A stretch of 32,719 nt of DNA. Origin: Fonticula alba ATCC 38817. Taxonomy: Eukaryota > Protista > Nucleariida. The DNA is taken from the NCBI GenBank assembly GCA_000388065.2, contig KB932207.1. One strand, given 5' to 3'. The translations under genes and the position numbers were made by a program. Below are positions 1 to 23,117 of the stretch, piece after piece. Each line of letters starts with the position of its first letter. Within the stretch, counting starts at the first letter, position 1. A model generated the notes under the pieces. The model saw only the letters and a list, made by a program, of their open reading frames with translations, had not been told where the DNA came from and searched no databases.

Positions 1-513
1 CCCCCCCCCCCCCCCCCATACACACACAAACATGCACAGACACCCACCGCCGCCACACGGGGCTTGCCTCGGTGTGTGTGGGCCTTTTCTCTTTTGACGC
101 GGGGCCAACTGTCAGAGCCACCCCGGCTGGGGCCGATCGTCCGGTGCGCCGGCCCGGGAGGATGGAAAGCACATCAGCGGGGCCCAAACAAGCGAGGCCG
201 GGCGATGGGCGGCCCCCGGGATGGGACTAGAGCTGAGGGGACAGTTTGGGGATATCACGTGCGCATGGTCAGCAATACCGAACTGATGGCGAATTTTGCC
301 CGGCCGCTGAAAGACACACCGAGCGGCACCCCCTTTTTTGCATGCGGGGGCTGGTACGCGCACACACAGCGGGGAAGCCGCCGCCGCCGCCGCCGCCGCA
401 CCCAGGACACAGGCGAACGCGCAGGACGCACATGCACACGATGGAGAGATGGGAAAGAGAGAGAGGGAGGGGGAAAAAGGATGTGCGGGTGTGCGATCAG
501 CAGGGAGAGGGGG

Positions 514-514
<1 letters not shown>

Positions 515-550
<36 letters not shown>
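515..550 (+). repeat. (CA)n microsatellite downstream of ATP6AP1
   Basis: Seen directly. Confidence 0.9.
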
Positions 551-551
<1 letters not shown>

Positions 552-963
552 CATGGAGCACAGTTGTTTATGTTTATAATATCTTGAAAAAGGAGACTGA
601 GGAAGAAGGAGAGGGAGAGACAAGGGGGAGGGAGCATAGGAGAAGGGGACTCGGCTGGATGCACATGGCGGGAGGAGAATGGGTGGTGCGTGATCGCGCG
701 GACGCGCGCATGGAAGGGCAGCAATAGCGAGCGGCTGGTGCGGGGAAAGCACCCTGTGGAGTATCCCCGCCGCGCGCCCGGGGGGCGGGGGGGGGGGGGT
801 CGCCCCTTTTGCGGGCCCACTCCCCTGTCCATTTTCCTCTCCTGAACACCGCCGACCACCCGGGGATGGACACGTCACATGTGGGAAAGCGCGCACAAGG
901 CGCGCGCCCGGAATGAGAGGGAAAGAGGGGGAGAAAGGAAGAAGGAGCGACACTTTGGCCCCC

Positions 964-1513
964 TTAGTCGCTCTTCTGGAAGTGGTCCGGGGCCTTGAGC
1001 GAAGCAAGGCAGGAGTAGGCCGACAGAAGAATGATGCCGAGGACAATCAGAGTGATGATGCCCATGAAGACGGCCGGGGCGAAGAAGGTGTAAGCGTCGA
1101 ACATGCCAGCGCCGGTAAGCCAGAAGCGGTCGGCCTTGGAGGCACCCTCGCCGGGGATGGAACCAGAGGTGGAGGACTCGGCCGGGGCATCGATGGCCTG
1201 CGGATGGGGGGCAGGGGCGGTTGGTCAGTGGCGCTTGTCGCAAAAGGCAAGGCAGGAGGGGCCGCGGATGAAAGACACGGGAACAGGGCGCAAGGGGAGG
1301 CAGACGCACAGTGTCGGCGACAAGAAGGACGGAAACCGAGGAGCCACCGTAGCCAGTGAGCTTGGTGGTGAGGGCGGTGGCAAAGTTGGCTGCGGATGGG
1401 GGAGGGGGGGACAAGAACAGGGCATGTGAGGAGGGGAGAAAGGGGCGGGTTGCAGGTGCTGGGGGTGTCACGACAGGGGGGGAGGGGAGGGGGAGGTGGG
1501 GGGCCAGAGCAAG

Positions 1514-1551
<38 letters not shown>

Positions 1552-2273
1552 ACGAGGAAAGGATGGCAGGATACGCACCGGCATCTCCGGAGGCGAAGCT
1601 GATGTCAACAACAGCCGGGGCGGCGGCAGCGAGGTCGAGGGCCAGGAGCTCGTCGGTGGTGTCGACGACAATGACAGTGGCGGCGTTCTTGGTGGCCAGG
1701 TCCCCGACGACCGAGGTGCTCAGGGCCTGGGCAGAGCCGGCCACATGGGGGTAAGAAGCGAAGGAGTTGGCAGCCTGGATGGCGTCCTGTGGTGGTGGGG
1801 GCGGGCGGGGGAAGGGTGTCAGAAAGGATGCTGGTGGAAGGAGGCCAGGAGGCAGGGTGCATCATGCGAGTGGCGCGCGTACGGCGAAGGCGCTCTCGAC
1901 GGCCAGGGCATCGCCGAAGGTGGACAGGACGATGGAGACGTCGACGACCGGGACATCGGACAGGCGGGCGGTGAGGGACGCAACGTCGTACTCCACAGGA
2001 GTGGCGTCCTTCAGGGCGTCGAGATCCCTGGAAAGGGGGAGGGGAGGGGAGCACACATGGGTTAGGCGGCAGGGCACGCATGCGAGAGAGCGAGAGAGAG
2101 AGAGAGAGAGAGAGAGGGGAGACACAGGCTCAAATGGCAAGCCGGCGAAGGGGATGGAGGACGCACTCAGTGTCGCTCCAGACGGTGGTGGTGCCAGCCG
2201 AGACGACACCAGCCACAAGGACCAGGAGAGCAAAGACGGAGGAGATGAGGCCGCGGGGGGTGAGCGGGGCCAT
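964..2273 (-). CDS. ATP6AP1: V-type ATPase accessory subunit S1 (Ac45/ATP6AP1/Voa1-like), about 257 aa, 5 exons (2273-2167, 2027-1883, 1786-1579, 1389-1310, 1197-964)
   Basis: The four GT..AG introns give a 774-nt frame ending in TAA. N-terminal signal peptide MAPLTPRGLISSVFALLVLVAGVVSAG. C-terminal TM and tail FFAPAVFMGIITLIVLGIILLSAYSCLASLKAPDHFQKSD resemble the Ac45 C-terminus (FFSPGIWMGL...LSLKTMDRFD), recognised from memory of the family. Confidence 0.72.
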
Positions 2274-4573
2274 GGTGACTCGCGAGGTGCGGGAGGGGGA
2301 CGACCAGCGACGGGAACTGCCGTCGGGGGGGTTAGAGAGAGAGGGGAGCCGGGGGCGGGAGGAGGAAAAAAACTATGGGCCAAGGGGGGGGGGGGCAGGA
2401 AGGAGAAGGAGCCAAGTGAACGGAATCCAGCCAGCAAGAGAATCGCGCGAGGATGGTGTGTGTGTGTGTGTGTGTGCGCGCGTGGAGAAGGCAGGACGAG
2501 AGGAAAGACGAAGGAGAGGGGAGGCATGATGCGGGGGGGGGGGGCTTACAGTGGGAATGGAAGTCAGGTGGGGGGTGTCCACGAAGGCGGGGCCCTGGGT
2601 CAGCGTGGTGGCCAAAAAAGGGCTCCACATTGAAAACAAGCCATCTTTGCCACGCCTGCCTGCCGCACCACCCGGCTCCCCCTGCCCTCCCCCCCCCTCC
2701 CCCCCCCCACCGGCACCTGCCCCGAGCAGACACCACGATACACCGGAGACCGGGCGGGCCGCGGGCCAGGCACCACCAGCACCACCCGCGGGCCAGGGAC
2801 TCTGGGCCGGGGATCTCCCTCGTCCTCCGGGGGGGGGGGGGGGCGGGCGGATGCCCAGACCCTGGACGCACGGCGCGGTCAGCCAAGCGGTCTCATGGCT
2901 GGGGCGAGGCCCCATGTATGGGCTGGGGGGGGGGGGGGCCACCAGCAGCCCCGAGTGCCCCGCCTGGACCTCGGCGCCGCTGCGAACGACGGTCGTGCCC
3001 GCCCCCAGCGGCCGTGGCCGCGCTCACACGCTCTCCCAGACGTGGCCAACAGGCAACCCTCCAGAGCACTTGCACGCGCATGCACACACACACAGACACA
3101 GACACACAGACACATTCTCCGAAGAGCGGCCGCGCTCGGCGCCAACCCTAGCTGGAGTGCGCAGCTGGTCCCAGCCGAGAAGGGAGCTCCCGAGCGAGGG
3201 AGGAAGCGACAATGGGGTGCCCGGATTTAGCGGCGGCACATGCACCATCAGCACAGCACGGTCTGCCCCGCGCCTGCCAAAGGGGGGGTGGTGGCCCAAG
3301 CCTGGCGGCCGAAAAAAACAAAAACACCCAGGCGAGCCGGAGGGCCTGTGAGCCAGGGCCCCCGGGCGGCCGGCACCTGTGACTGGCCCCGGCGTCCCTG
3401 CCGCAGGTCCGCCATGGTCCGGCCGCCCGGGCGGGGCGGGGGAGCCTCGCCGTGTGTGCCCCCCCCCCCCCCGCGCCCCAGCCCGTGAAAGGGACAAAAG
3501 ACTGGAGCCCGGACCGCCCGGAGGGTCGGGCGCGACTGCGCGCTCGGACGGAGGGGGCGCGCGCAGAGGCCCCCCCCCGTTGGCCGGAATACGGGCGCGC
3601 AGTTCCGCCCGGCTGTCTCATGTGGCGCGTCCCTGTGTTGTGACGACATGTGATCTGGCGGACTCCAGAACCGCCAGCGTGAATCCAACCCTGTGCGACA
3701 CACCGCAGGCACGCGCGGTTCGTTCTGGGCTGGCCCGGCTGGGCGCGGCGCCAGCTGGCTGGGAACCGGCACAGGATGGCGCAAGGCGGCAGGGGAGAGG
3801 TGGCCTGACGGATGCGTGTTGGACACTCCGGCGCATACTGGGGTGCCGGGCGGAGCAGGTCGCACGGATTCCGACACGCGCGGCTAGGCTCCCCGGTGCC
3901 GGTCATGAACACGGCTCGGCGGAATATTCCGCACTATTTTTAGTGGCCAGATCATTGCCCAGTGTGGTTGAGGGGCCTGCCCGAGCACACCCAGCCGGGC
4001 CGGGGGTATGGCGGGGCAGGAAGAGGGAAGATCGGCCCATTTCCCCCCCACCCCCCCCCTTTCGAACTCGACCAGCTCTGGGCGTTCGCAGGGGGGAGGT
4101 GTCCGGGGAGAATGTGCTTCTGGACTTGCAACACCCAGTTCCACCCTGCCCCCTGCGCGCGGTTCCCCCGCCCGCCGCCTTGCGGCCCGGCTGCCTGACG
4201 TGCGGCCCGGCGCAGGCGTGGGCCCCCCCGAACGCCGGAGACTGCAGGCGCTCGCGGGCAGGCCATCCTCCTGGAGGGGCTGAGGGGGGTGGCCGGGGGG
4301 GGGGGGGGGGGGGGGGAGGGTCGGGGAGCCGCGCGCCATGCCGACCGGCGCACGGGCGCGGCATACTGAAGACCACCCAGCCCGCCGGCCGCCAGCTCCG
4401 GGCCAGATCCCCCTCTTTGACAGCTATATCCCCCCTTGGAGATCACCTCCGCCTGTACGTGCGTCGCCTCTCGGTCTTCCCTCCCGGTCCTCCTCCCTCC
4501 CTTCCCCCCCTCCCTCTCACTCACCGGAGCCCCGACACACCCCTCTCCCCAGGCAAGAAAAGAGTACCGCGAT

Positions 4574-4666
4574 ATGACGACCATGTCTGCGACCTCTGCT
4601 GCCCCGCCCAAGTCTACCGTGCGTTGCCCTCCCTCCCCGCCCCCCCCCCCCCCCCCCTTTGCATCC

Positions 4667-4789: not shown

Positions 4790-7109
4790 CCCTCCTCCCC
4801 TCGCTATGACTGACCGCGTCGCGCCGCCCCTCGCCGTAGACATGTGCTTCCAGGACCTCACGGCCAGCCACCAGCCCGACATGCTGGGCACCGTCACCGG
4901 TGCCGGCCTCATCGGCCAGCAGCTCACGGTCCCGCTCACCCTGTCCCCCCACCCGGTGTACACGCTGCCGATGCTGAGCGTTTCGGCCACCAAGGGCACC
5001 GGCATCGTGGTGTCGGTCCCGTCCGACTCGCCGGACGACTTCGCCGCCTTCCGCGACCTGAAGTCCAAGCCGGCCTTCTGCGAGAAGTACGATGTCGACC
5101 ATGCCTGGGTGCGCGACGTGTCGCCGGTGCACATCATCGATGTGCCTGGCTACTCCGGGCCCTGCGCCGAGATCGCCTGCGACGAGTTCAAGGTCCAGTC
5201 CCAGAACGATGCCGTCGCCCTGGCCAAGGCCAAGGACGAGGCCTACAAGCGCGGCTTCTATGAGGGTGTCATGCGGGTGGGCGCCCATGCCGGGGCCAAG
5301 GTCGAGGAGGCCAAGCCCCTCATTCGCCAGGAGCTCCTGGCCGCCGGGCAGGCCGTGGTCTACTACGAGCCGGAGGGTCCGGTCATGTCGCGCTCGCTCG
5401 ACGAGTGTGTCGTGGCCCTGGTGGACCAGTGGTTCATCGACTACGGCGATGACGAGTGGCGCCAGACGGCCCTGCGCTGCCTGGCCCGCATGAACATCCC
5501 GGCGCGCGAGACCCAGAACCAGTTCGAGGCGGTCTTCAACTGGCTCGGCCAGTGGGCCTGCTCCCGGAGCTTCGGCCTGGGCAGCCGCGTCCCCTGGGAC
5601 GAGCAGTACCTGATCGACTCGCTGTCCGACTCGACCCTCTACCCGGCCTACTACACGGTGGCGCATCTCCTGCAGCAGGGCGCCCTGGACGGATCGGTCG
5701 TTGGCCCGGCCGGCCTGGCCGCCGATGCCATGACCCCCGATGCCTGGGACTTTGTCTTCCTCGGGACCGAGCCGGCGGCCGATGCCCCGGCCGCCGCGCA
5801 TCTGGACCAGCTGCGCGCCCTGCGCCGGGAGTTCCTCTTCTGGTACCCGTGCGACATGCGCGTGTCCGGCAAGGACCTGGTGCCCAACCATCTGACCATG
5901 TACATTTACAACCATGTGGCCCTGCTGGAGGAGCGCCACTGGCCCGGCGGTGTGCGCACCAATGGCCACCTCCTGCTGAACATGGAGAAGATGTCCAAGT
6001 CCACCGGCAATTTCATGACCCTGGAGCAGGCCGTGTCGGCCTTCGGGGCCGATGCCGTGCGCATTGGTCTGGCCGATTCCGGCGACACAGTGGAGGATGC
6101 CAACTTCCAGTCGGAGCTGGCCAACAAGGCCATCCTGCGTCTGCATGCGCAGCTCGACTGGACCCGGACCTTCCTCCGGGACCAGGCCAACCCGGCCACC
6201 GCCCTGCCGGTCAAGGAGCCCTCCGCCTACACGCACCATGATCTGGTGTTCCTGTCGCGCATGAGCGAGGCCATGGCCGGGGCGCTGGATGCCTACGAGC
6301 GGACCATGTACCGTGAGGCTCTCAAGTGCGGCTTCTTCGACATGCAGGCCGCGCGTGATCGCTACCGCGATCTGACCGCCTCGGCGCCCACCCCGGCGGC
6401 CGGGCCCTGTGGCGGCCTCCTGCGCCAGTTCATCGAGTACCAGGCTCTCCTGCTGGCGCCGATTGCCCCGCACTTCTGCGAGTATGTGTGGCAGGATCTC
6501 CTCGGCCACGAGGAGTCGGTCACCGCCAGCCGCATGCCCACCCCGCCGGCCGTCGACCGGATTTGCCTCATGGCCGACACCTATGCCGAGGAGGTCATCC
6601 ACCGGATGCGCCTGGCCCGCGAGGCGGCCATCAACCCGCCCCGGCCGCGCGTGGCCAAGGGGGTCACCCCGCCGCCGCTGGTGGTGTACGCCTCCCCGGT
6701 CCACTGCCGGCTGACCGTCACCCGGGCCTTCACCCCGGTGCAGCTCGCCGTCCTGAGCGCCCTGCGCGAGAACTACTCCTCGGCCACCGGGGAGTTCACC
6801 CTCCCGGAGAAGGACATCCGCGATCGCGCCCGCAAGAGCCTGCCCGACCCCAAGAAGGACACCAAGGTGGCCATGAACTTCTTTGCCACGGTGCTCACCC
6901 GGTTCGAGCTCCTCGGCGAGTTTGCCTTCAACGACCAGCTGCCCTTCGACGAGGCCCACATCCTCGGCGAGTACAAGGACTACATCCTGTCCTCCTTCGG
7001 TCTCAAGGAGCTGGACATTGTGGACAATGTGGCCGACACCCTGGCCACCCCCTGCGTGCCGGAGATTGCCTTCACCCTCCGGGTCAAGGAGGACGAGGCC
7101 CAGGAGTAG
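4574..7109 (+). CDS. LARS1: Cytosolic (eukaryotic-type) leucyl-tRNA synthetase; N-terminal ~330 aa including the HIGH motif absent from this assembly. Putative first exon 4574-4618, main exon 4840-7109
   Basis: Main exon encodes the CP1 editing motif GTGIVVSVPSDSPDD, WACSRSFGLG, SDSTLYPAYY, SGKDLVPNHLT and KMSKS. Branch-like CTGAC and TAG acceptor at 4810-4839. Upstream MTTMSATSAAPPKST followed by a GTGCGT donor at 4619. The 5' structure is uncertain. Confidence 0.93.
4641..4790 (+). repeat. Interrupted poly-C tract (about 150 nt) inside the LeuRS gene; likely assembly collapse point
   Basis: Near-pure C run seen directly. Confidence 0.9.
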
Positions 7110-9176: not shown

Positions 9177-11279
9177 CTACGACCCCCATGCCGGGGAGTC
9201 AGCCCGGTCCGGGTGCAGGCGCTCGGAGTGTGTAGCCTCCAGGCCGGCTGCCACGTCGGCGGTCGCCAGCGGCGGGAGGTTGACTGTCCCCGGGGCTGGC
9301 GGGCTGGCCACGCCCACTCCATCGGAGTGCTGATGGTGGCGCGGCGGGATGGCTATCCCGATGGGTGGTGACAGGCCGTGCGCCTGGGCCCGGCTCGAGG
9401 GCAGACTGCGGACCCCGCCGGGCGGCGGTGGTGGCAGGAAGCTCGCCCCGGGTGACAGAAGCAGCGGCGAAGCCCCAGGCGTCGCCATGGCATCGATCAC
9501 GGCCGCCGTGTGGCTGACGTACCCGAGCCGGCCGCTGCCCGGGCCGAGGCTGGGCCGCGGCCCGCGCGGAGTCTTCACCACCGCCCCGGGCGGCCATCCC
9601 CCTTCGGGATCGGACTCGAGGTCGGGCCCGTCGTCCGAGTCGCCGGGCTGCTTGGAAGCGCGCGAGCCGGGCCGCCCAGACACGGGCCCCGGCGGCGGCG
9701 TCGGCGGCGACGGCGGCAGCGGCGGCGGCGGCATCGCCGTGTGCCACATGATGAAAAGGCTCAGGAGCAGGCCCAGGCCGATGCACGACCAAATGGCGGC
9801 ATAGGGCCCGGCGCGGTGGGCCACTTGGCGGCGGAAGGCGGCCGGCTGGTGGCCGGGCACTCCCACCGGGCCAGGGGGCAGGGGCAGTGGCTCGGGCGCC
9901 CCGGGCGGCCGGGGACGCGGCCCGATCAGCACCGCATCCTCCGGCAGCCGATTGACAAACACCACATACATGTCCAGGGGCCGGGCGCCGCGATTGGGCA
10001 GGACCGCATGGCAGCCACATCCCCGGCACGAAAGGGGCCGGTCCATGGCCGGCGCGTCATCATCCTCGGCCGAGTCGCTTGGGGTGCTCGTTGACCCATC
10101 GCCATTGCCACGGTCATCGGTGTTGCTCCTGCTGCTGCTGCTGCTGCTGCTGCCGCCGCCGCCGCCGCCGCCGGGGCCGGGGCCATCACTCCCGCTGAGG
10201 GTGTCAGCCCCTTGCCCCGGCGATGGCTCAGGCGCCTGGCCGATCACCCACGGCTGCGTATGCTGATACACCCGGGCCGCCACGTCGAAGCGCTGGGACA
10301 CGGTGATGGCGGCCGTGTCGGGCCCCGGGGGCATCCCCTCGACGGCGACCCGGCACCACAGCCGACTGTCCCCGACCAGGCTGATGGTGGCATTGAAGTT
10401 CAGCGGCCCGCCAGGGCGGAAGGTGTCCCGATGGAGGACCGCCATGCCGGCGGCCCCCGGCCCAGGCTGGGCCTTGAGGAAGGCCCGCGCGAGCGGCTGC
10501 TCCAGGTACTCGATGGTCACGCGCAGGCTGGCCAGGTCGTCGGCCGGCTGGCCGCGGTTCGCCAGCTCGGAGATGTCGATGTGCGTCTCGATGTCCACCT
10601 GGGACCCCTGCAGCAGGTCCAGGCCAATGGGCCAGCTGGGCCCGGAGGCCGGGGCAAAGCGCCCGGTCCGGGTGACCCCCCAGCGCACGGGGTCCAGACT
10701 GAGGGCGGGCCTCACCGGTCCGGGAAAGATGACGGCCGTCACCCCGGCGCAGGAGCCCGGGCTCGGGTGGGCGGCCTCGAGCAGCCGAACCCCCGTGGCA
10801 TAGTCCCAGGGTATCTTCTCCATGCGGCTGGTCCCGCCGGCGGCCAGCGATCTTTCCCCGGTCGAAGGGTAGGGAGTTGACAGGCCGGTGATCAGGGCCA
10901 CGGCCGCGAAGAACCCCAGCACCAGGGCCAAGCCGCGCTTGCGATAAGCCCACACCGGAGCCAGGAGGCCCCCGGGGGCCGGGGGCGTGGGGGCCGAGCC
11001 GCGAAGCGACTGCGATCTCGGGGATTTGCCGGCCACCCGGTGGTCGCCGGAGTCGGCCTCGCTCACAAGGGGGGACACCTCCTCGGAGAGGATGTCGGCT
11101 GGTGGGTCCTCATCGAGGCCGGAGCCGCGACCCAGCTGGTGCATGTCCGTGGAGTATGGGTCGCCATCGGGGCCCGGGCCGATGTCCTCCAATTCGATGT
11201 CCTCGTCGGCATAGCCGGTACCCCAGCCGGCGAGATCGGCCGAGTCCGAGTGGAAGAGGTTCGCCGACCGGAGCTCCAT
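9177..11279 (-). CDS. Hypothetical two-transmembrane protein, about 700 aa; may extend upstream into the N gap
   Basis: Long uninterrupted ORF ending in TAG. Hydrophobic segments GLALVLGFFAAVALITGL and AAIWSCIGLGLLLSLFIMW flank a ~400-aa region containing globular-looking stretches. Acidic N-terminus, Pro/Ser-rich C-terminus. No family recognised. Confidence 0.7.
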   Translation of the reverse strand: MELRSANLFHSDSADLAGWGTGYADEDIELEDIGPGPDGDPYSTDMHQLGRGSGLDEDPPADILSEEVSPLVSEADSGDHRVAGKSPRSQSLRGSAPTPPAPGGLLAPVWAYRKRGLALVLGFFAAVALITGLSTPYPSTGERSLAAGGTSRMEKIPWDYATGVRLLEAAHPSPGSCAGVTAVIFPGPVRPALSLDPVRWGVTRTGRFAPASGPSWPIGLDLLQGSQVDIETHIDISELANRGQPADDLASLRVTIEYLEQPLARAFLKAQPGPGAAGMAVLHRDTFRPGGPLNFNATISLVGDSRLWCRVAVEGMPPGPDTAAITVSQRFDVAARVYQHTQPWVIGQAPEPSPGQGADTLSGSDGPGPGGGGGGGSSSSSSSRSNTDDRGNGDGSTSTPSDSAEDDDAPAMDRPLSCRGCGCHAVLPNRGARPLDMYVVFVNRLPEDAVLIGPRPRPPGAPEPLPLPPGPVGVPGHQPAAFRRQVAHRAGPYAAIWSCIGLGLLLSLFIMWHTAMPPPPLPPSPPTPPPGPVSGRPGSRASKQPGDSDDGPDLESDPEGGWPPGAVVKTPRGPRPSLGPGSGRLGYVSHTAAVIDAMATPGASPLLLSPGASFLPPPPPGGVRSLPSSRAQAHGLSPPIGIAIPPRHHQHSDGVGVASPPAPGTVNLPPLATADVAAGLEATHSERLHPDRADSPAWGS

Positions 11280-11340: not shown

Positions 11341-11750
11341 NNNNNNNNNNNNNNNNNNNNNNNNNNNNNNNNNNNNNNNNNNNNNNNNNNNNNNNNNNNN
11401 NNNNNNNNNNNNNNNNNNNNNNNNNNNNNNNNNNNNNNNNNNNNNNNNNNNNNNNNNNNNNNNNNNNNNNNNNNNNNNNNNNNNNNNNNNNNNNNNNNNN
11501 NNNNNNNNNNNNNNNNNNNNNNNNNNNNNNNNNNNNNNNNNNNNNNNNNNNNNNNNNNNNNNNNNNNNNNNNNNNNNNNNNNNNNNNNNNNNNNNNNNNN
11601 NNNNNNNNNNNNNNNNNNNNNNNNNNNNNNNNNNNNNNNNNNNNNNNNNNNNNNNNNNNNNNNNNNNNNNNNNNNNNNNNNNNNNNNNNNNNNNNNNNNN
11701 NNNNNNNNNNNNNNNNNNNNNNNNNNNNNNNNNNNNNNNNNNNNNNNNNN
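11341..11750. other. Assembly gap (410 N)
   Basis: Run of n in the sequence. Confidence 1.
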
Positions 11751-13539: not shown

Positions 13540-16500
13540 ATGATGTCCCTTCCGTATTTGCTCACCCGGCCGGCCGGCCAGGCTGCATTCACCATGCCGC
13601 AGTGGGCCCCGGGCTCCGGGCTACTCCTCGCCCGGGCTCTGGCCACCTATCATTCCGGAGCCGGAAACCAGGATGAGAATAGCGTCAGTTTGAACATTTT
13701 CAAAGCCGCTCGTCGTCGAGCGCCGGCCACCTCGGCCTCGGCATCTGCCGCCACCAGCACCGCGGCCGGGTCCGCCGCCGCCCCCGAGGACCCCGGCTCG
13801 GGGAGCTGGGCCGCGCGCCAGCACGCGCAACTTGCCCGGCACCCGGATCGCAAGGGCAACCCCGGGTATGCCTATCTTGCAGGGTTTGGCACCATCTCCG
13901 AAGGGGGCAACAATGCAGCCCCGGAGGGAGAGGCCGAACCGACCGGCGACGACAAGGAACTTGCCCCTGCGGCCCTGCGGCGGCAGAAGCGCCTCTTGCG
14001 CCAGCGCCAGCGGTCGCAGTCGCGCAAGTCGTCCGACCACCAGTGTGACCATGATCACAGCTGTGGCGATGATCATGACGATGCCGATGATGCCGATGAT
14101 GCCGATGATGCTGATGGGACGGACGGTGTTTATGACAGCGCTGATGAGCACCACACCGCGTCGGACTGCGACCATGACCATTCCCACGGCCACGGCTCCT
14201 CCCCCGCTGGCGGCCAAGCCAAGCGGCCCCCCTCGCGCCGGGCCGCCAACCACCGGTCCCACTCATGGTCCAGGAGTGCCATCTCCCCGGGCGAGGTGAA
14301 GACCTTCATGCGCCGGGTCAAGGGCAACATGTGTCTGCTGTGTGGCACCCACCCAAGCAGCCAGCCCTGCCTGAATCCGCAGCTCCAAAAGCTCGGGCTC
14401 ACCTTCATCCACAACCGGAATCCCTTTTCCTACATTTCGGCCCAGGAGTACTCCTTCTCCTCGGCGTGCGTCTTTTGCGGCGAGGTGAACCACGCGTCCG
14501 CCGACTGTCGCCTTGCCCGGCGCATCGGCGTCAGCTACTCGCCGAATGGGTTTTCCCGGCCGTCGGAGCTGACCCTGGCCCTGTCGAGCCAGGGCCTGTG
14601 CTCCTTTTGCCTGGCCCCCCACTCGTCATGGGACTGCCCGGATCGGCCCTACTACGCCGGTGTTTCGACGCCGGTCCCCTGCAAGGACAGCCAGGCTCTG
14701 AGCCAGCGCTTTTCGGCCGACCTGTGCGTGGTGTGCGGCAAGCACTCCTATGCCGATGTCTGTCCGGAACTCCTGTCCCAGGGGGTCATCTATGTGGGGC
14801 ATGCCTTTCCCTTTGGCCGCCTGGTCAAGGACGTGGCCCGGAGCCAGCACGCCCTGGCCATGACCCCGATGCTGACCACGCCGGTGCGCATGCCGCCGCA
14901 TTTCAACCGCGAGAACTACCCCAACATGGATCCGCGGTCGTTGTCGGTGCTGGAGCAATTCTACCGCCTGCGCAAGGAACAGGGCTTCACCCTGCAGCCG
15001 GATCAGTGTGCCATTTGCGGGCTGACGCACCCGGTGCCGGGGCTTTGTCAGCCGGCTTTGCGGGCTGGCTACCGGTTTACGCATGACTTCAACCGGTACA
15101 TCTATTCCTCGGCTCTGGTCCGCTCAGCGGCCCAGGGGACCCTGTCGAACAATTTCCACCAGCGCTCGGCCACCCCCTTCGGCGACCCCTTCTTCACGGC
15201 GGCGATCCAGGGCCAGCGACTGAACCCGCGCCCGTGGGCTGAGGGCGAATCGGCGAGCGGCTCGGCCGCCGGTTCCCCGGCCGTCGGGTCCATGTTCACC
15301 GGCACGGGCATGGCCAATTACCCGGATGACCAGTCTCTCGGCGAGTCAGACGAGCTGACCCCCGGCATCTCGCTGACCCCCTTCCGGACCATCCCTCCCA
15401 CCGGGATCCGGGGCCAGGAGCCGCGCATCATCCAGCCGGCCAGTCGCGTGCAATTGTCCAATTCCCTGCGCCTGTTGAAGTCCATCGGGACCAAGGTCCA
15501 CCACCGGTTCTTGCCATACTCCAGCCTCCTGGCCACCGAGGGACAATCCCTGTGTGGCTATTGCTTCGAGCATAGTGCGCACTTGCCGTGCCCGGTTCTC
15601 CAGCGCCTGGACATCTTGCTGCAGTACAACATCTTCCACCTGCCGGCGCAGGCGACCCAGGACCAGCGCCTCCGCGAGGGCTTGTGCCCGGTGTGCGGCA
15701 CCCATCCGGCCACGGTGTCCTGCTTCCTGTACGACGTGCTGGCATTGGACCCGCGCAATCCGCTGCTCCGGCTGCCGGGGCTGATGTCCACGCGCAATGA
15801 CCTCGGCATGTGCCGGCTGTGTGGGCTCCACGCCAAGGACACCCCCTGCCGGGCCATCAACAGCCTCGGCTGGGAGGTCAACTCGCATGCCTTCAACATG
15901 CGCAAGACCCGGCAATACCCGCTGGAAATGAATGGCATGTGCTCCTTCTGCGGGCGGCATTCCAATACGGAGGCCTGCCCGCACTTCCCCTCCACGTCGG
16001 CCCTCTATGTGCGGAATACGCTGGTCGTGTCGCCCTTCATGCAGGAGCTCTCCTCCCGGCATGACATTTGCCCCACCTGCTTCGGGCACAGCCAGCTGAG
16101 CAAGTGCCCGGTGGCGCATCAGGTCAATTTGCGCACCTACCCGCGCTTCCAGAACCCCATGCTGCCGGTGACCGTGCGCAAGCAGGGGCTCTACTATACG
16201 CCGGAGCCGCACCCGGATCCCATCTACCTGCCGGATGAGCAGGTGATGGTGGTGCGCCGGAGCCAGATCGGGGAGATATGTGCCATTTGTCTGAAGGACC
16301 ATCCTCCCTCGGAGCGCTGTGTGTCCCTCTTTGAGGGGGAGAATTTGGTGCAATTGCGCAAGCAGCTGTACCGCCGGGCGGTGGCGTCCACCATTTGCGA
16401 GATGTGCCCCCTGTGCTCGGCCCATCCGCTGGATGAGCCCTGTCCGTACTACCTGTCGCCGGAGCGCCTGACCCGGGTGCGTGTGACGCAGGAGCGCCGG

Positions 16501-17568
16501 GCGGAGCGTGCCCGGCGCGAGGGCCTGCCCATTCCGTCCAACCGCCCGGGGCGCAATCCGCACCACTCGGCCGGGCCCGGCATCGCCGGGACCAACAGCC
16601 AGCAGCCCCTGGACTCGATGATCATCACGGCGGTGGTGTCGCATGGCGGCCGCAAGGGCTCGGTCCTGCTTCGGGGCCGGCTGCACTTGCACCCGAATGA
16701 GCTGGAAGAGCGCCTGCAAAGCCAACGGTGCCTGTACTGTGGCCTGCATGGGAATGCCCAGCCGTGCGCCCTCATGGCGTCTCTCGGGTTCGTGGTGACC
16801 GGGCCCCATCGGCAATTGCAAATGGCGGCCGAGGCTCGTGCCGTGGCCGAGGACCTGGGCCTGTGCCTGCGGTGCTTCTCACATCACCGGTCGCGGCCGT
16901 GCGACGAGTCGGTGGCCAACAGCGCGGCCGGCCGGGCTGGCCTGCCGCTGGCCGTGTCGGATGAGCTCTTCGCGCGGTACTTTGATCCGGAATCGCCGGA
17001 CTTCCGGGCCCCCAGCGGCCCGGCCTCCCTGGGCACCGCCGGGCGCAAGATGAATGTCCTGCTGCCGGCCGAGTACTTCGAGTCCGTGTCGCCGGTCAAC
17101 TCGTCGCTGAACTTCTCGCACAACTTCCTGCGCACGGTGTCCATCATCCGGGACACCCTGCTCAAGAATCACATCTACAAGCCGTGTCTCTTCTGCGATG
17201 TGGTGCACGGGCATGAGCCCTGCCCGCAGCTGACCAAGCTGGGCTTCATCCACAATGGCCACTCGCGCAATCCGCTGCAGGTGCGCCTGGATGTGTTGAT
17301 TTCTCGGAATATCGCACGGAACTGCGGCATTTGCGGCTCGCATCCGGATTCGCTCGAGTGCCCGATCGTGGCGCAAATGGGCGTGCGCTTCGTCAACAAC
17401 CGCTTCTATCCCCAGACAAACATCGAGTCGAACAAGCGCAACCACTGCCACCTGTGTCTGCTGCACCTGGCCAGCGAGCAGTGCCCCTTCCTGTCGTTGG
17501 TTCACCAGTCGACGCCGACCCGGGCGCGCGATCCCCTGGCCAAGCTCCGCATTGCCAACAACCTGTGA
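13540..17568 (+). CDS. Large intronless protein with 17 tandem atypical CCHC zinc-knuckle-like repeats; probable in-frame extension through UGA to 17700. Start at 13540 or 13594
   Basis: ORF of about 1340 codons with 17 C-x2-C-x(2-4)-H-x(4-5)-C motifs from 14332 to 17484 and a His/Asp-rich N-terminal tract. Confidence 0.88.
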   Translation: MMSLPYLLTRPAGQAAFTMPQWAPGSGLLLARALATYHSGAGNQDENSVSLNIFKAARRRAPATSASASAATSTAAGSAAAPEDPGSGSWAARQHAQLARHPDRKGNPGYAYLAGFGTISEGGNNAAPEGEAEPTGDDKELAPAALRRQKRLLRQRQRSQSRKSSDHQCDHDHSCGDDHDDADDADDADDADGTDGVYDSADEHHTASDCDHDHSHGHGSSPAGGQAKRPPSRRAANHRSHSWSRSAISPGEVKTFMRRVKGNMCLLCGTHPSSQPCLNPQLQKLGLTFIHNRNPFSYISAQEYSFSSACVFCGEVNHASADCRLARRIGVSYSPNGFSRPSELTLALSSQGLCSFCLAPHSSWDCPDRPYYAGVSTPVPCKDSQALSQRFSADLCVVCGKHSYADVCPELLSQGVIYVGHAFPFGRLVKDVARSQHALAMTPMLTTPVRMPPHFNRENYPNMDPRSLSVLEQFYRLRKEQGFTLQPDQCAICGLTHPVPGLCQPALRAGYRFTHDFNRYIYSSALVRSAAQGTLSNNFHQRSATPFGDPFFTAAIQGQRLNPRPWAEGESASGSAAGSPAVGSMFTGTGMANYPDDQSLGESDELTPGISLTPFRTIPPTGIRGQEPRIIQPASRVQLSNSLRLLKSIGTKVHHRFLPYSSLLATEGQSLCGYCFEHSAHLPCPVLQRLDILLQYNIFHLPAQATQDQRLREGLCPVCGTHPATVSCFLYDVLALDPRNPLLRLPGLMSTRNDLGMCRLCGLHAKDTPCRAINSLGWEVNSHAFNMRKTRQYPLEMNGMCSFCGRHSNTEACPHFPSTSALYVRNTLVVSPFMQELSSRHDICPTCFGHSQLSKCPVAHQVNLRTYPRFQNPMLPVTVRKQGLYYTPEPHPDPIYLPDEQVMVVRRSQIGEICAICLKDHPPSERCVSLFEGENLVQLRKQLYRRAVASTICEMCPLCSAHPLDEPCPYYLSPERLTRVRVTQERRAERARREGLPIPSNRPGRNPHHSAGPGIAGTNSQQPLDSMIITAVVSHGGRKGSVLLRGRLHLHPNELEERLQSQRCLYCGLHGNAQPCALMASLGFVVTGPHRQLQMAAEARAVAEDLGLCLRCFSHHRSRPCDESVANSAAGRAGLPLAVSDELFARYFDPESPDFRAPSGPASLGTAGRKMNVLLPAEYFESVSPVNSSLNFSHNFLRTVSIIRDTLLKNHIYKPCLFCDVVHGHEPCPQLTKLGFIHNGHSRNPLQVRLDVLISRNIARNCGICGSHPDSLECPIVAQMGVRFVNNRFYPQTNIESNKRNHCHLCLLHLASEQCPFLSLVHQSTPTRARDPLAKLRIANNL

Positions 17569-17787
17569 CTTACCTGTGGCAACCATGAGTACCGCGAGGA
17601 CATGGCCAACTGCCCGCGTGCCGCCGAGGCGGCAGCCGTCCGCCGGTCGGCCGATTCCACCCGCCGCCGGACGGAGATGTCCCGGTTGCGCACCATGTGA
17701 TGGGGGACCGGCGGGAGGCCCTTTGCCCGGTCTTGTCTACTTCCCCCCCCCTCCCCCCTCCCCCCTCCCCTCTCCTCTCTTTCCTTT

Positions 17788-17822
17788 GCCCTCTGCCCTC
17801 TGCCCTCTGCCCTCTGCCCTCT
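17788..17822 (+). repeat. (GCCCTCT)5 heptamer tandem repeat downstream of the zinc-finger gene
   Basis: Seen directly. Confidence 0.85.
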
Positions 17823-18237
17823 GCCTCCTCCTGTGCTGGCGGTAGGGACACACACACACACACAGGCAGGGGGGGGGTCTGTGTGTGGTCACCCCCTAGA
17901 TGCACGCACACATGCATGCCACCTCTCCCCCGACGCAAGTGTGCACCGCACGCGCTGTGGCCCCACGATGCCCGAAAATAGACAATATCCAAAATCACAT
18001 GACCCCGCTCTCGCGATCGGGCTTTTCTCGCCCCGCCCTGTGTGCCGCGCGCAGCATGCCCCGCCACACCGCCCCCGCCCGCCCCTCCTCCTCCAGATCT
18101 TGCCGTCCGCCGTGCTGGGGTCTCCCCGACGTCTGCTCCGCCCCTCGCCCCCTCCGCCCCGCCCCGCCCCGCCCCGCCTCTTTTTTTCCCGCCGCCTCCG
18201 TCACCGGCTGCCCGTCCGAGCCTTCCCTCAGGGCGCC

Positions 18238-18727
18238 ATGCCAGCCTCGTCGGACAGGGGTCCGTCGATCGACCAGCCGGCGGGGTCGCCCGGGCCGGAT
18301 CTCCCCCTGGGCATGGCCGCTGACCTGGGGCAACCACTCGCGCCGCAGTCGCTGGCCTTGGTGTTGCAGTCGCCACCAGCCCCGGCCACCACCCCGGCCG
18401 CGACCGTAGCTCACGCTCTGCCGACCATGCCATCGGATTTCCACTTCCAGAGTCGCCTCAGCTCGGATCCCTGGTCGCTGGCGGCCCTGGCCCAAGCGTG
18501 GCGGCATGCTGAGCCCTTGCTGCCAGGGCCTCTGGCACGCCCCCTCTGCGAGGCCGACTCCACGCCCGGCCCATGGTGGCTGCCATCCTGGTGCCCTGGC
18601 GATGATCCACTCCTGGAGGATATGGAGTATGTGCCGCCCGCGGCTTCCCTGCTTTCCTGGGCGTGGCCCTCGCAGGTGTACTGATCTCCACCTGACCCCT
18701 GTCCCCTCACCTCTGTTCCCTCGCTCG

Positions 18728-18790
<63 letters not shown>

Positions 18791-20433
18791 GCGCGCGCGC
18801 GCCCGCCCGTCTATCTCCCCTTGTGTCCCCCTCTCGCTTCTTTCGGGCCCCCGGCTCACACAGTGTCGCGGCCCTCAAGCACGAGCACCTCACCCAGCTG
18901 GTGTTCCATGCGATTGACCCGCGGCCGCCGAGCACCTCGACACAGGAGGCCTCCGGCGAGACCGGGGCGCCGCGCTCGGTGGCCGAGCGTCTTGCCTCGC
19001 CCACCGCGCCCGTGTCATCTCAGCACCTCCTGCGGTCGGTCCGGCCAACGGGCGAGTCCCTTTGCCGGGTGAATGTGACGGACCTGCCCAACACCCGAAG
19101 CACATACCTGGCTGATGAGCCGACGATCGACCCGCGCGCGCGAGACGCCTTTCGAGCTCGGTATGGCGGCTCGCCCGCGGCCGGACCCGAGCAGGAGCTG
19201 CTGCTGGATCTGACGGTCTTCCTGCCGCCCTGCCTGACTCCGAACAGCTCGCAGACCCGGGCCCCGGCGTCCGGCAGGATGACGCACATCCGGGCCCCGG
19301 CGTCGGCCACTCTCGGGCACATTGCGAATCTGATCGCGTGCCCCCTGCTGCGGCCGGCGTCGGAAACGCCGGCCGAGACGAAAGGCGCCGCCGAGATCGC
19401 GCCCCCTGTCGCGGCCGACGGTGATCTCCCCCGCCCGGGGCGACTCTTCCTCGTGGAGGGGGTCCTGTATGAGGACACCCAGCATGCGGACGCCCCGTGC
19501 CTCAGCAGGTGCATGACCTATGACCACCCCTCGCGCCACGCCCAACATGCGGTGCTCACTCGCTGCGTTGCCCTCCATCGCCTCCGCTCCCCGCCCCCCT
19601 CCCCCCCCTCCCCTCCCCATCTCCCTAGTCACATCCAGGAGTGGGTGACCACACCCGGGCGATCGTTGCCACCACACCTATGCCCCCCGGCGGCTGGCAC
19701 CTGGCATCCGGGTCGCTCTGGCGAGAGGCATCCCCGGCTGGAGGTTCGCCCCCTTGGAACCCAGCGCCTGGATCAGATCCCCGAGGCGCTGCGTCTTTTT
19801 CAGCCCTACCTCTTTGCGCATGAGCTGGTGGATCCGCTGCTGCGGGGCACAGCCAGCGGGCATTCCATTTGCGAGCATGTTGTCTGTGTCACAGATGTCC
19901 GGTGCGTCTCAAAAAGGCGCCCCCCCCCCCCCCGCTCCTGCGAACAGATGCCCTGACCTTGGATTTGTGTGTCTACCGATCCCTCCTCTTTCCCCGCCGG
20001 CCCTGTCCCTCCTCCTCGTCCCCTTGTCCGGGCCTGGTGGGGGTCGTGAAGAACGCCCACGCCGTATGATTACAAGGTGCCCAAGCCGGGCATGCAGCCA
20101 ACTCTGGACCATCTGCCGGCGGCTCGGCAATTTGCCCGGCCCTTCGATGTCTATTGCGACGTTTGCCAAGATCGCCAGTCTAGCCATATGGTCCAGATTT
20201 CCGAGCAGGCAGCCTCGGCGATGGCCCTTCCCCAGTCGCCGGCTTTGTCGGGGAGCTCGGCCCCGGCCGATGCCCCAGCCGCCGGGACCAGCTTCCCCTC
20301 GCCCTTCGAGTTCACACACCTCTGCCAAGGGTGCTTCAATGCCCTGCTCTTCGATGCTGACGGCAATCCCCTCTGGGATACGAGCGAGCTGCGCGTGGTA
20401 TCCGACCATCCGGCGGCCGAATACAACGACTAG
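18238..20433 (+). CDS. SNAPC3: snRNA-activating protein complex subunit 3 (SNAP50), 4 predicted exons (18238-18677, 18864-19508, 19629-19901, about 20052-20433)
   Basis: LFLVEGVLYED, PYLFAH...CEHVVCVTDVR and CDVC...CQGCFNALLFDADGNPL match the SNAPC3 motifs (FFIEGTFYND, YLYCHQGDCEH, CxxC...CDVCFRMLHYDSEGNKL) as I recall them. First exon and last acceptor are less certain. Confidence 0.8.
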
Positions 20434-22709: not shown

Positions 22710-23117
22710 NNNNNNNNNNNNNNNNNNNNNNNNNNNNNNNNNNNNNNNNNNNNNNNNNNNNNNNNNNNNNNNNNNNNNNNNNNNNNNNNNNNNNNNNNNN
22801 NNNNNNNNNNNNNNNNNNNNNNNNNNNNNNNNNNNNNNNNNNNNNNNNNNNNNNNNNNNNNNNNNNNNNNNNNNNNNNNNNNNNNNNNNNNNNNNNNNNN
22901 NNNNNNNNNNNNNNNNNNNNNNNNNNNNNNNNNNNNNNNNNNNNNNNNNNNNNNNNNNNNNNNNNNNNNNNNNNNNNNNNNNNNNNNNNNNNNNNNNNNN
23001 NNNNNNNNNNNNNNNNNNNNNNNNNNNNNNNNNNNNNNNNNNNNNNNNNNNNNNNNNNNNNNNNNNNNNNNNNNNNNNNNNNNNNNNNNNNNNNNNNNNN
23101 NNNNNNNNNNNNNNNNN
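22710..23117. other. Assembly gap (408 N), adjacent to a (GA)n microsatellite, inside the short divergent promoter region between APA2 and RAB5IF
   Basis: Run of n in the sequence. Confidence 1.

What the first reader, a model, noticed from the sequence alone, without database searches (positions are those of the whole stretch)
17566..17700. In-frame UGA occupies the first Cys of an 18th zinc finger: candidate UGA recoding (Cys/Sec) of a metal ligand
Seen: the frame reads ...KLRIANNL-UGA-L-T-C-G-N-H-E-Y-R-E-D-M-A-N-C-P-R...RLRTM-UGA(17698). In tandem runs the linkers between fingers are 28-33 aa, and the UGA comes after a 27-aa linker whose ending (ANNL) parallels SQGL-C, REGL-C, MNGM-C and DLGL-C. 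The rest of the motif (xxC-xx-H...C-P) is intact, with a longer H-to-C spacing of 8, and the 43 extension codons are GC3-rich like the rest of the gene. Established: UxxC is a selenoprotein signature, UGA followed by C is the leakiest stop context, and UGA readthrough inserts Trp, Cys or Arg. Inference: recoding may produce short and long isoforms that differ by one finger and a basic tail, or a Sec-liganded zinc finger. I found no canonical SECIS by eye in 17700-18240, which favours Cys readthrough or a recent nonsense allele over Sec.
Basis: partly seen in the sequence, partly recalled or inferred. Interest (0 to 1): 0.88.

Follow-up and report, generated by a model that had tools for sequence, protein, structure and literature searches.

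The report
Stop codon truncating a terminal zinc finger
In the amoeba Fonticula alba, a lineage-specific protein with 17 zinc-finger modules ends at a TGA sitting where the first cysteine of an 18th module should be; this is most likely an ordinary, fairly recent nonsense change rather than selenocysteine or programmed recoding, but I could not check it against raw reads.

Summary
The window is Fonticula alba scaffold KB932207.1 (GCA_000388065.2). The annotated single-exon gene 13540-17568 (1342 aa) carries 17 modules. TGA 17566-17568 replaces the invariant first Cys of an 18th module, which keeps every other consensus position but has three extra residues before its last Cys. The 43 codons up to the next TGA (17698) have full coding-type codon usage.

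Selenocysteine is not supported: no SECIS was found, and the module is a zinc knuckle, not a redox fold. UGA is a normal stop here: 5 of 22 annotated genes end in TGA, and four of them, one also TGA-C, have no coding signal after it. Nothing else in about 80 kb looks like this site. No RNA structure follows the stop and no downstream exon is visible.

Best reading (about 0.58): a TGC/TGT-to-TGA nonsense substitution, recent compared with the old, diverged array, cut off the last module. Basal UGA-C leakage may still make traces of the long form.

Rivals: a base-call error or heterozygous site (about 0.17), and selected readthrough (about 0.12).

No orthologues exist in the searched databases. 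First-stage notes report other in-frame TGAs elsewhere in this genome; they are unchecked.

The parts
13540..17568 (+). Annotated single-exon CDS, 1342 aa, of a Fonticula-specific multi-zinc-finger protein; it ends at the TGA in question
   Evidence: The public annotation of KB932207.1 places the gene at exactly these coordinates. GC1/2/3 are 0.63/0.51/0.83.
14332..17484 (+). Array of 17 modules (finger plus a linker of about 30 aa); family consensus R-x4-L-C-x2-C-G-x-H-P-x4-C-P
   Evidence: Regex and alignment. All 17 are found by a module HMM at 20-37 bits. The modules are old and diverged at the DNA level.
17548..17565 (+). Lead-in of module 18 (R-I-A-N-N-L), matching consensus R(-6) and L(-1), still inside the annotated CDS
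17566..17568 (+). TGA at the position of the invariant Cys1 (35 of 35 aligned modules have Cys); context CTG-TGA-CTT-ACC, i.e. UGA-C
   Evidence: Cys1 codons of the other 17 fingers are TGC x12 and TGT x5, each one substitution from TGA.
17569..17616 (+). Rest of finger 18: L-T-C-G-N-H-x8-C-P, with Cys2, Gly, His, Cys4 and Pro kept and 3 extra residues in the His-Cys loop
17617..17697 (+). 27-codon Ala/Arg-rich basic tail with coding-type codon usage, lacking the usual linker pattern
17698..17700 (+). Next in-frame stop (TGA-T), the presumed original stop codon
17701..18237 (+). Low-complexity 3' UTR and intergenic stretch up to the start of the next + strand gene (SNAPC3-like, from 18238); no SECIS and no exon-like coding window
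   Evidence: Rfam scan at E<=10, my own SECIS pattern scan, fold of the only nearby AUGA, coding scores, gene calls

Best explanation
A single-base nonsense substitution (TGC or TGT to TGA) hit the first zinc-ligand Cys codon of the last, already atypical, 18th module of a Fonticula alba-specific zinc-finger array protein. UGA works here as an ordinary stop, so the main product is the annotated 1342-aa protein with 17 fingers. The remaining 43 codons (the rest of finger 18 plus a basic tail) now lie in the 3' UTR as a young relic that has not yet lost its frame or codon bias. Because the context is UGA-C, a small basal fraction of ribosomes probably reads through, sometimes inserting Cys. That would be a by-product, not a programmed event.

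Shown: the homology of module 18, the coding-type extension, normal use of UGA as a stop in this genome, and the absence of a SECIS or RNA structure. Inferred: the direction and recency of the mutation, that the truncated protein is functional, and that leakage is only basal.
For: - Module 18 matches the family consensus at R(-6), L(-1), C2, G, H, C4 and P. Only Cys1 is replaced, and TGA is one step from both Cys codons used in the gene.
- The extension has coding-type codon usage in this frame only: 0.27 per codon against -0.60 and -0.47 in the other frames, and GC3 0.86 against a downstream mean of 0.70.
- The modules are old and diverged at the DNA level, so module 18 is not a recent duplicate.
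- UGA is a normal stop. Five of 22 annotated genes end in TGA, including a TGA-C (the Vps4-like gene). All four others have negative coding scores after the stop.
- In about 80 kb on both strands, this is the only in-frame stop flanked by coding-like sequence.
- There is no SECIS, no structured RNA after the stop (z -1.1) and no downstream exon-like window.
- Both paralogues end in long non-finger tails with TAA or TAG and no relic after the stop, so ending inside a module is the exception in the family.
Against: - The intact frame and undecayed codon bias of the extension are equally expected if the extension is still translated and under selection.
- UGA-C is the leakiest context and favours Cys-tRNA in yeast (PMC4748822), so readthrough would partly restore exactly the missing ligand.
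- The base call at 17568 was not verified against reads. The four best DNA runs all hold only 0.82 of the sampled words of 17470-17730. One single-base difference would remove about 13% of the words, so an assembly or allele difference is not excluded.
- No orthologues are available to date the stop.
Confidence: 0.58

Rival explanations
1. Base-call or assembly error, or a heterozygous or polymorphic site. The real genome, or one allele, has TGC or TGT, and the protein is 1386 aa with 18 fingers.
For: The extension is indistinguishable from live coding sequence. The assembly dates from 2012 and rests on small runs. The best DNA holders, from two species labels, all miss the same share (0.18) of sampled words around the stop. 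A paralogue carries a 100% identical 208-nt tandem duplicate that may be an assembly artefact. First-stage notes list several other in-frame stops in otherwise intact genes of this genome (unchecked).
Against: The site is not in a homopolymer, so the usual error type of such assemblies does not apply. The word-share figure cannot be tied to a position.
Confidence: 0.17
2. Selected (programmed) UGA-C readthrough. Two isoforms are made, and the long one gains an 18th finger, when near-cognate tRNA-Cys decodes UGA, plus a basic tail.
For: The UGA-C(U) context. In yeast, UGA-C is the leakiest tetranucleotide and favours Cys-tRNA (PMC4748822), and UGA readthrough inserts Trp, Cys and Arg (PMC4150775). 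The extension is open, in frame and coding-like, and completes a module.
Against: No stimulatory RNA structure follows the stop. The context is not the extended UGA-CUA-G motif. Most readthrough events in yeast insert Trp (82%), which cannot bind zinc. Another TGA-C stop in this genome shows no coding continuation. The His-Cys loop is 3 aa longer than in the other modules and the tail lacks the linker pattern, so module 18 looks degenerate. Conservation could not be tested.
Confidence: 0.12
3. Selenocysteine insertion: a Sec-liganded zinc finger.
For: The UGA aligns with an invariant Cys, which is the classical Sec/Cys pattern.
Against: No SECIS turned up in 17300-19000 on either strand with all Rfam models at E<=10, nor in my own AUGA...AA...GA scan of 17569-19200. 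The only nearby AUGA does not fold into a SECIS-like hairpin. The 3' UTR is bounded by the next gene at 18238. The module is a structural metal site, not a thioredoxin-like redox fold. Sec machinery in F. alba is not documented in the papers I searched.
Confidence: 0.02
4. UGA is generally a sense or weak-stop codon in Fonticula alba, i.e. a genome-wide code peculiarity.
For: Five first-stage notes report in-frame TGAs joining coding-like frames elsewhere in this genome (unchecked AI notes).
Against: Five of 22 annotated stops are TGA, and four of them have clearly non-coding sequence after the stop. Only one in-frame TGA with coding flanks was found in about 80 kb.
Confidence: 0.02
5. An unannotated intron or alternative 3' exon removes the TGA.
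For: A GT lies at 17565-17566, and the TGAC around the stop resembles a branch-site core. F. alba does have GT-AG introns (a 167-nt intron in the P0002 gene).
Against: Finger homology continues in the same frame immediately after the TGA. No exon-like coding window lies between 17701 and the next gene. The public annotation is single-exon.
Confidence: 0.02

Closest known systems
Near-C-terminal nonsense truncation of a tandem-repeat protein, leaving a pseudo-repeat relic in the 3' UTR
   Same: The stop is one substitution from the conserved residue's codon. The downstream frame and codon bias are retained. Only the last repeat is lost. In a single-exon gene no exon-junction-dependent decay is expected (inference).
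   Different: The age and any polymorphism of the stop are unknown, because no second strain or orthologue could be examined.
Functional stop-codon readthrough genes (e.g. MDH1/LDHB-type UGA-CUA-G; leaky UGA-C in yeast, PMC4748822, PMC5133446)
   Same: The context is UGA followed by C-U. The extension is in frame and coding-like, and it would add a recognisable module.
   Different: There is no CUA-G motif, no downstream structure and no cross-species conservation to test. Function of the extension would need Cys in particular to be inserted at the stop.
Eukaryotic selenoprotein genes (Sec/Cys pairs, UxxC/CxxU redox motifs)
   Same: An in-frame UGA aligns with a Cys that is invariant in the paralogous modules.
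   Different: There is no SECIS. The Cys is a structural zinc ligand in a knuckle, not a catalytic redox residue in a thioredoxin-like fold.
CCHC zinc knuckles (Pfam zf-CCHC PF00098 and relatives)
   Same: Ligand order is Cys-Cys-His-Cys, with a CxxC knuckle followed by Gly, and the modules are arrayed in tandem.
   Different: Spacing is mostly C-x2-C-x2-H-x5-C, and the canonical x4-H-x4 occurs in 1 of 17 fingers. Each finger is followed by a conserved Pro and a linker of about 30 aa predicted as a short helix plus a hairpin. Only 1 of 35 modules touches zf-CCHC, at E 0.027. No PDB match was found by sequence profile or fold. Relatives were found only as two F. alba paralogues among 1.84 billion representatives.

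Membership tests
Eukaryotic selenoprotein gene | In-frame UGA aligned with Cys in homologues | tested here: met
   The UGA falls in the column that is Cys in 35 of 35 paralogous modules.
Eukaryotic selenoprotein gene | SECIS element in the 3' UTR | tested here: not met
   An Rfam scan at E<=10 of 17300-19000 on both strands gave no SECIS family. My own pattern scan of 17569-19200 gave 0 candidates. The fold around AUGA 17999 is unremarkable (z 0.23).
Eukaryotic selenoprotein gene | Sec machinery (tRNA-Sec, SPS2, eEFSec, SBP2, PSTK, SepSecS) in the genome | not testable with these tools
   Only the window and a few loci of the genome can be read. Literature searches gave nothing for Fonticula.
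Programmed stop-codon readthrough | Leaky stop context (UGA followed by C; extended motif UGA-CUA-G) | tested here: inconclusive
   The context is UGA-CUU-A, so the +4 C and +5 U match but the full CUA-G motif does not. Another F. alba gene ends in TGA-C with no coding continuation.
Programmed stop-codon readthrough | Stimulatory RNA structure downstream of the stop | tested here: not met
   Fold of 17560-17700: z-score -1.10, and 27 of 200 shuffles fold at least as well.
Programmed stop-codon readthrough | Extension with protein-coding signature | tested here: met
   The codon-usage score is 0.266 per codon in frame, against -0.60 and -0.47 off frame. GC3 is 0.86. No downstream non-coding window reaches that score. 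This is equally expected for a young relic.
Programmed stop-codon readthrough | Conservation of stop and extension across species; ribosome or peptide evidence | not testable with these tools
   There are no orthologues: the only two homologues are F. alba paralogues.
CCHC zinc knuckle (Pfam zf-CCHC) | C-x2-C-x4-H-x4-C spacing and a match to the family model | tested here: not met
   Only finger 2 has the canonical spacing. The whole protein has no zf-CCHC hit. One of 35 modules hits at E 0.027, below any cut-off.
Nonsense-truncated terminal repeat (relic in 3' UTR) | Stop one substitution from the conserved residue's codon, with recognisable repeat homology on both sides in the same frame | tested here: met
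   TGA against TGC/TGT. R-x4-L lies before the stop and x2-C-G-x-H-x8-C-P after it.
Nonsense-truncated terminal repeat (relic in 3' UTR) | The stop codon is a functioning terminator in the organism | tested here: met
   Four other genes of 21 end in TGA, with coding scores after the stop of -0.18 to -0.79.
Nonsense-truncated terminal repeat (relic in 3' UTR) | The base is real in the genome (not an assembly error) and relatives carry a sense codon | not testable with these tools
No relatives were found.

The most novel reading that the evidence does not exclude
The UGA-C is kept by selection as a 'self-correcting' leaky stop. Near-cognate tRNA-Cys, which is favoured at UGA-C in yeast, reinserts the very zinc ligand that the stop replaces. 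The gene would then make a 17-finger form and a minor 18-finger form with a basic tail. This might be part of a wider use of UGA readthrough in Fonticula alba, as hinted by other unchecked in-frame TGA notes in this genome.
Probability: 0.1. Interest if true: 0.6.

Novelty: new member of a known kind. Interest (0 to 1): 0.25.

Why it matters
If the stop is a plain nonsense change, the interest is local. It shows that the last module of a Fonticula-only zinc-finger array is dispensable, and it marks a gene model whose 3' end needs a read check.

It would matter more if reads confirm the TGA and translation past it is substantial. A stop placed on a metal ligand and decoded by Cys-tRNA would be a neat natural case of context-directed near-cognate decoding restoring function. 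Together with the other in-frame TGAs noted in this genome, it would justify a genome-wide look at UGA termination efficiency in a deep-branching relative of fungi.

The module family itself has no Pfam, PDB or out-of-species match. It is an uncharacterised zinc-binding repeat, and that may be the more durable point of interest.

Tried and rejected
- **Read-level check.** No base or depth evidence was obtained.
- **Orthologue search.** Three word-index protein searches with different query lengths found nothing, not even the gene's own product. The exhaustive representative search found only two F. alba paralogues. A JGI metagenome protein scan and an exact DNA pattern with N at the third stop base found nothing. 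An exact-protein look-up returned only the reference record.
- **Sec.** The Rfam scan, my own SECIS scan and a local fold were all negative. Literature on Sec in Fonticula: nothing found.
- **Organism guess.** I first guessed a trypanosomatid or Acanthamoeba from composition. That was wrong: the record and a preprint identify Fonticula alba.
- **'TGA is avoided as a stop in this genome'.** The first 11 genes suggested this (1 of 11). It was rejected after extension to 22 genes (5 of 22).
- **Fold and family assignment of the module.** The AF2 model has pLDDT 79, but Foldseek against PDB gave no match better than E 3.5. Pfam, a PDB profile search and the protein atlas gave only noise.
- **Cryptic intron.** Rejected, because homology continues in frame and there is no downstream exon-like window.

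Full report
**What is there.** The window is part of Fonticula alba ATCC 38817, assembly GCA_000388065.2, scaffold KB932207.1. An exact look-up of the neighbouring RRM protein returned that record, and a preprint names the accession as F. alba. The public annotation calls a single-exon gene at window 13540-17568 encoding 1342 aa. The next + strand gene (SNAPC3-like) starts at 18238. Translation shows 17 fingers of the form C-x2-C-x2-4-H-x4-5-C between 14332 and 17484. In tandem runs the start-to-start spacing is 41-46 aa.

**The stop and what follows it.** TGA 17566-17568 lies 40 aa after the start of finger 17. It is followed in frame by L-T-C-G-N-H-x8-C-P, then 27 Ala/Arg-rich codons, then a second TGA at 17698.

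**Is module 18 real?**
- I aligned the 17 modules with 18 modules from the only two homologues found anywhere (see below). The family consensus is R-x4-L-C-x2-C-G-x-H-P-x4-C-P, with the three Cys invariant in 35 of 35 modules.
- Module 18 keeps R(-6) and L(-1) before the stop and C2, G, H, C4 and P after it. Only Cys1 is replaced by the stop, and the His-Cys loop is 3 aa longer.
- Of 1536 stop codons in all six frames of about 63 kb of F. alba DNA, this is the only one followed by even a loose version of the motif.
- The 43 extension codons score 0.266 bits per codon on a codon-usage model trained on other genes. That is the 38th percentile of the gene's own windows. The two other frames score -0.60 and -0.47, and no window in the following kilobase reaches 0.266. 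GC3 is 0.86, against 0.84 in the CDS and 0.70 downstream.
- A profile HMM is less impressed: 3.6 bits with X at the stop, about the 99th percentile of shuffles. The missing Cys, the insertion and a tail unlike the usual linker all cost score, so module 18 is a somewhat degenerate member.
- The modules share no long DNA identity with one another. The array is therefore old, and module 18 is not a fresh duplicate.

**Is UGA a normal stop in this organism?**
- The first 11 annotated genes I could see ended 10 times in TAA or TAG, with the only TGA being this one. Several first-stage notes also report in-frame TGAs elsewhere in the genome. I therefore tested for a code peculiarity.
- Extending to 22 annotated genes gives TAA 9, TAG 8 and TGA 5. 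The four other TGA genes are Ap4A phosphorylase, EMC6, a Vps4-like gene with TGA-C, and a ribosomal L34-family gene. All have negative coding scores after the stop (-0.18 to -0.79), against +0.34 here.
- I scanned about 80 kb on both strands for any stop flanked by 40 coding-like, stop-free codons on each side. It returned only 17566.
- UGA therefore terminates normally in F. alba, and this site is an exception, not a rule.

**Selenocysteine.**
- All Rfam models at E<=10 find no SECIS on either strand of 17300-19000.
- A pattern scan for the AUGA...AA...GA core with flanking helices finds none in 17569-19200.
- The only AUGA in the short 3' UTR does not fold into such a hairpin.
- The module is predicted as a knuckle, a short helix and a hairpin (pLDDT 79). 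It has no significant match in PDB, Pfam or the protein atlas. It is a structural metal site, not the thioredoxin-like redox fold in which UxxC/CxxU motifs occur (established knowledge).
- Whether F. alba has the Sec machinery could not be tested, and the papers I searched say nothing about it.
- Sec is very unlikely.

**Readthrough.**
- For: the context is UGA-C-U. In yeast, UGA-C is the leakiest tetranucleotide and favours Cys-tRNA (PMC4748822). UGA readthrough inserts Trp 82%, Cys 14% and a little Arg (PMC4150775). Some long form, a fraction of it with the correct ligand, is therefore physically plausible.
- Against a programmed event: there is no stable structure after the stop (z -1.1) and no full UGA-CUA-G motif. 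Another F. alba TGA-C stop has nothing coding behind it. Module 18 is degenerate. Most readthrough products would carry Trp at a zinc-ligand position.
- Conservation, the usual decisive test, is impossible. An exhaustive HMMER search of 1.84 billion representatives found only two homologues, both F. alba paralogues at about 31% identity (P0001 on KB932204 and P0002 on KB932209). Both end in long non-finger tails, with TAA or TAG and no relic after the stop.
- The word-index protein searches and the metagenome scans found nothing.

**Splicing.** F. alba has GT-AG introns; the P0002 gene has a 167-nt example. Here, however, finger homology continues in the same frame right after the TGA, no exon-like window lies between 17701 and the next gene, and the annotation is single-exon. 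I reject this reading.

**What could not be done.** The base at 17568 is therefore unverified.
- Run look-ups show the stretch in DNA runs of two species labels and in several environmental metagenomes. RNA-type runs of the source organism also hold parts of it, so the 3' region is probably transcribed.
- The four best DNA runs all hold only 0.82 of the sampled words of 17470-17730. A single-base difference would remove about 13% of the words.
- That figure cannot be tied to a position and is not evidence either way. It is the reason I keep an error or heterozygous allele at about 0.17.

**Verdict.** Most likely (about 0.58) this is a real TGC/TGT-to-TGA nonsense substitution that cut the last, atypical module off an old 18-module array. 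It would be recent enough that the 43 orphaned codons still look coding. UGA acts as the stop, with at most basal leakage. Selected readthrough stands at about 0.12, an error or second allele at about 0.17, and Sec, genome-wide recoding and splicing at about 0.02 each. The finding is a correct observation with an over-ambitious reading. I score its interest as low to moderate. The uncharacterised, apparently Fonticula-only zinc-finger module family is the more unusual object at this locus.

Noticed in passing
L001:7375-7807 (gene of paralogue P0001, F. alba KB932204.1): A 208-nt direct repeat, 100% identical, spaced 225 nt apart. In the annotated protein a stretch of about 70 aa appears twice. 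It is either a very recent tandem duplication or an assembly artefact.
   Followed up: partly
window 4842-7109 (+), and upstream 1-4577: The leucyl-tRNA-synthetase-like gene is annotated at only 755 aa. Pfam matches cover just the end of the class I catalytic domain and the anticodon-binding domain. No coding-like ORF for the missing N-terminal part is visible upstream. It could be a truncated paralogue or an incomplete gene model.
   Followed up: partly
window 16800-18300 and 17470-17730: Near-identical DNA is held by runs under a second species label (2025 DNA runs, with many 2026 RNA-seq runs under the same label). It is also held by soil, sediment, air and sludge metagenomes. That is unexpected for a rarely isolated amoeba. 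The four best DNA runs all share the same incomplete word share (0.82) around the stop.
   Followed up: no
other pieces of the same genome (notes s1-065815, s1-065440, s1-065955, s1-066886, s1-066036): First-stage notes list four further in-frame TGAs and one TAG joining coding-like frames in F. alba: a kinase DFG-1 position, a TGA-CTA-G with a 310-aa tail, a TGA-C before a 577-codon frame, and a PIG-Q neighbour. All are unchecked. In the roughly 80 kb I could read, only the present site behaves this way.
   Followed up: partly
L007:21242-22324 (-), F. alba KB932209.1: An annotated 360-aa gene whose product hits Pfam Heliorhodopsin (PF18761), in this holomycotan amoeba.
   Followed up: no
window 17741-17870: A dense run of simple repeats directly after the gene: a poly-C/CT tract, CCCTCTG x6, (CA)n and poly-G. 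This is the stretch whose part 17781-17828 tripped the read laying filter.
   Followed up: no
window 11341-11750 and 22710-23117: Two assembly gaps (runs of N, 410 and 408 bases). The first lies just beyond the 5' end of the annotated 700-aa minus-strand gene (9177-11279), so that model may be incomplete.
   Followed up: no
window 14332-17484; L001, L002: The module R-x4-L-C-x2-C-G-x-H-P-x4-C-P plus a linker of about 30 aa has no Pfam, PDB or atlas match. It was found in only three F. alba genes among 1.84 billion representative proteins. It looks like an uncharacterised lineage-specific zinc-binding repeat.
   Followed up: partly
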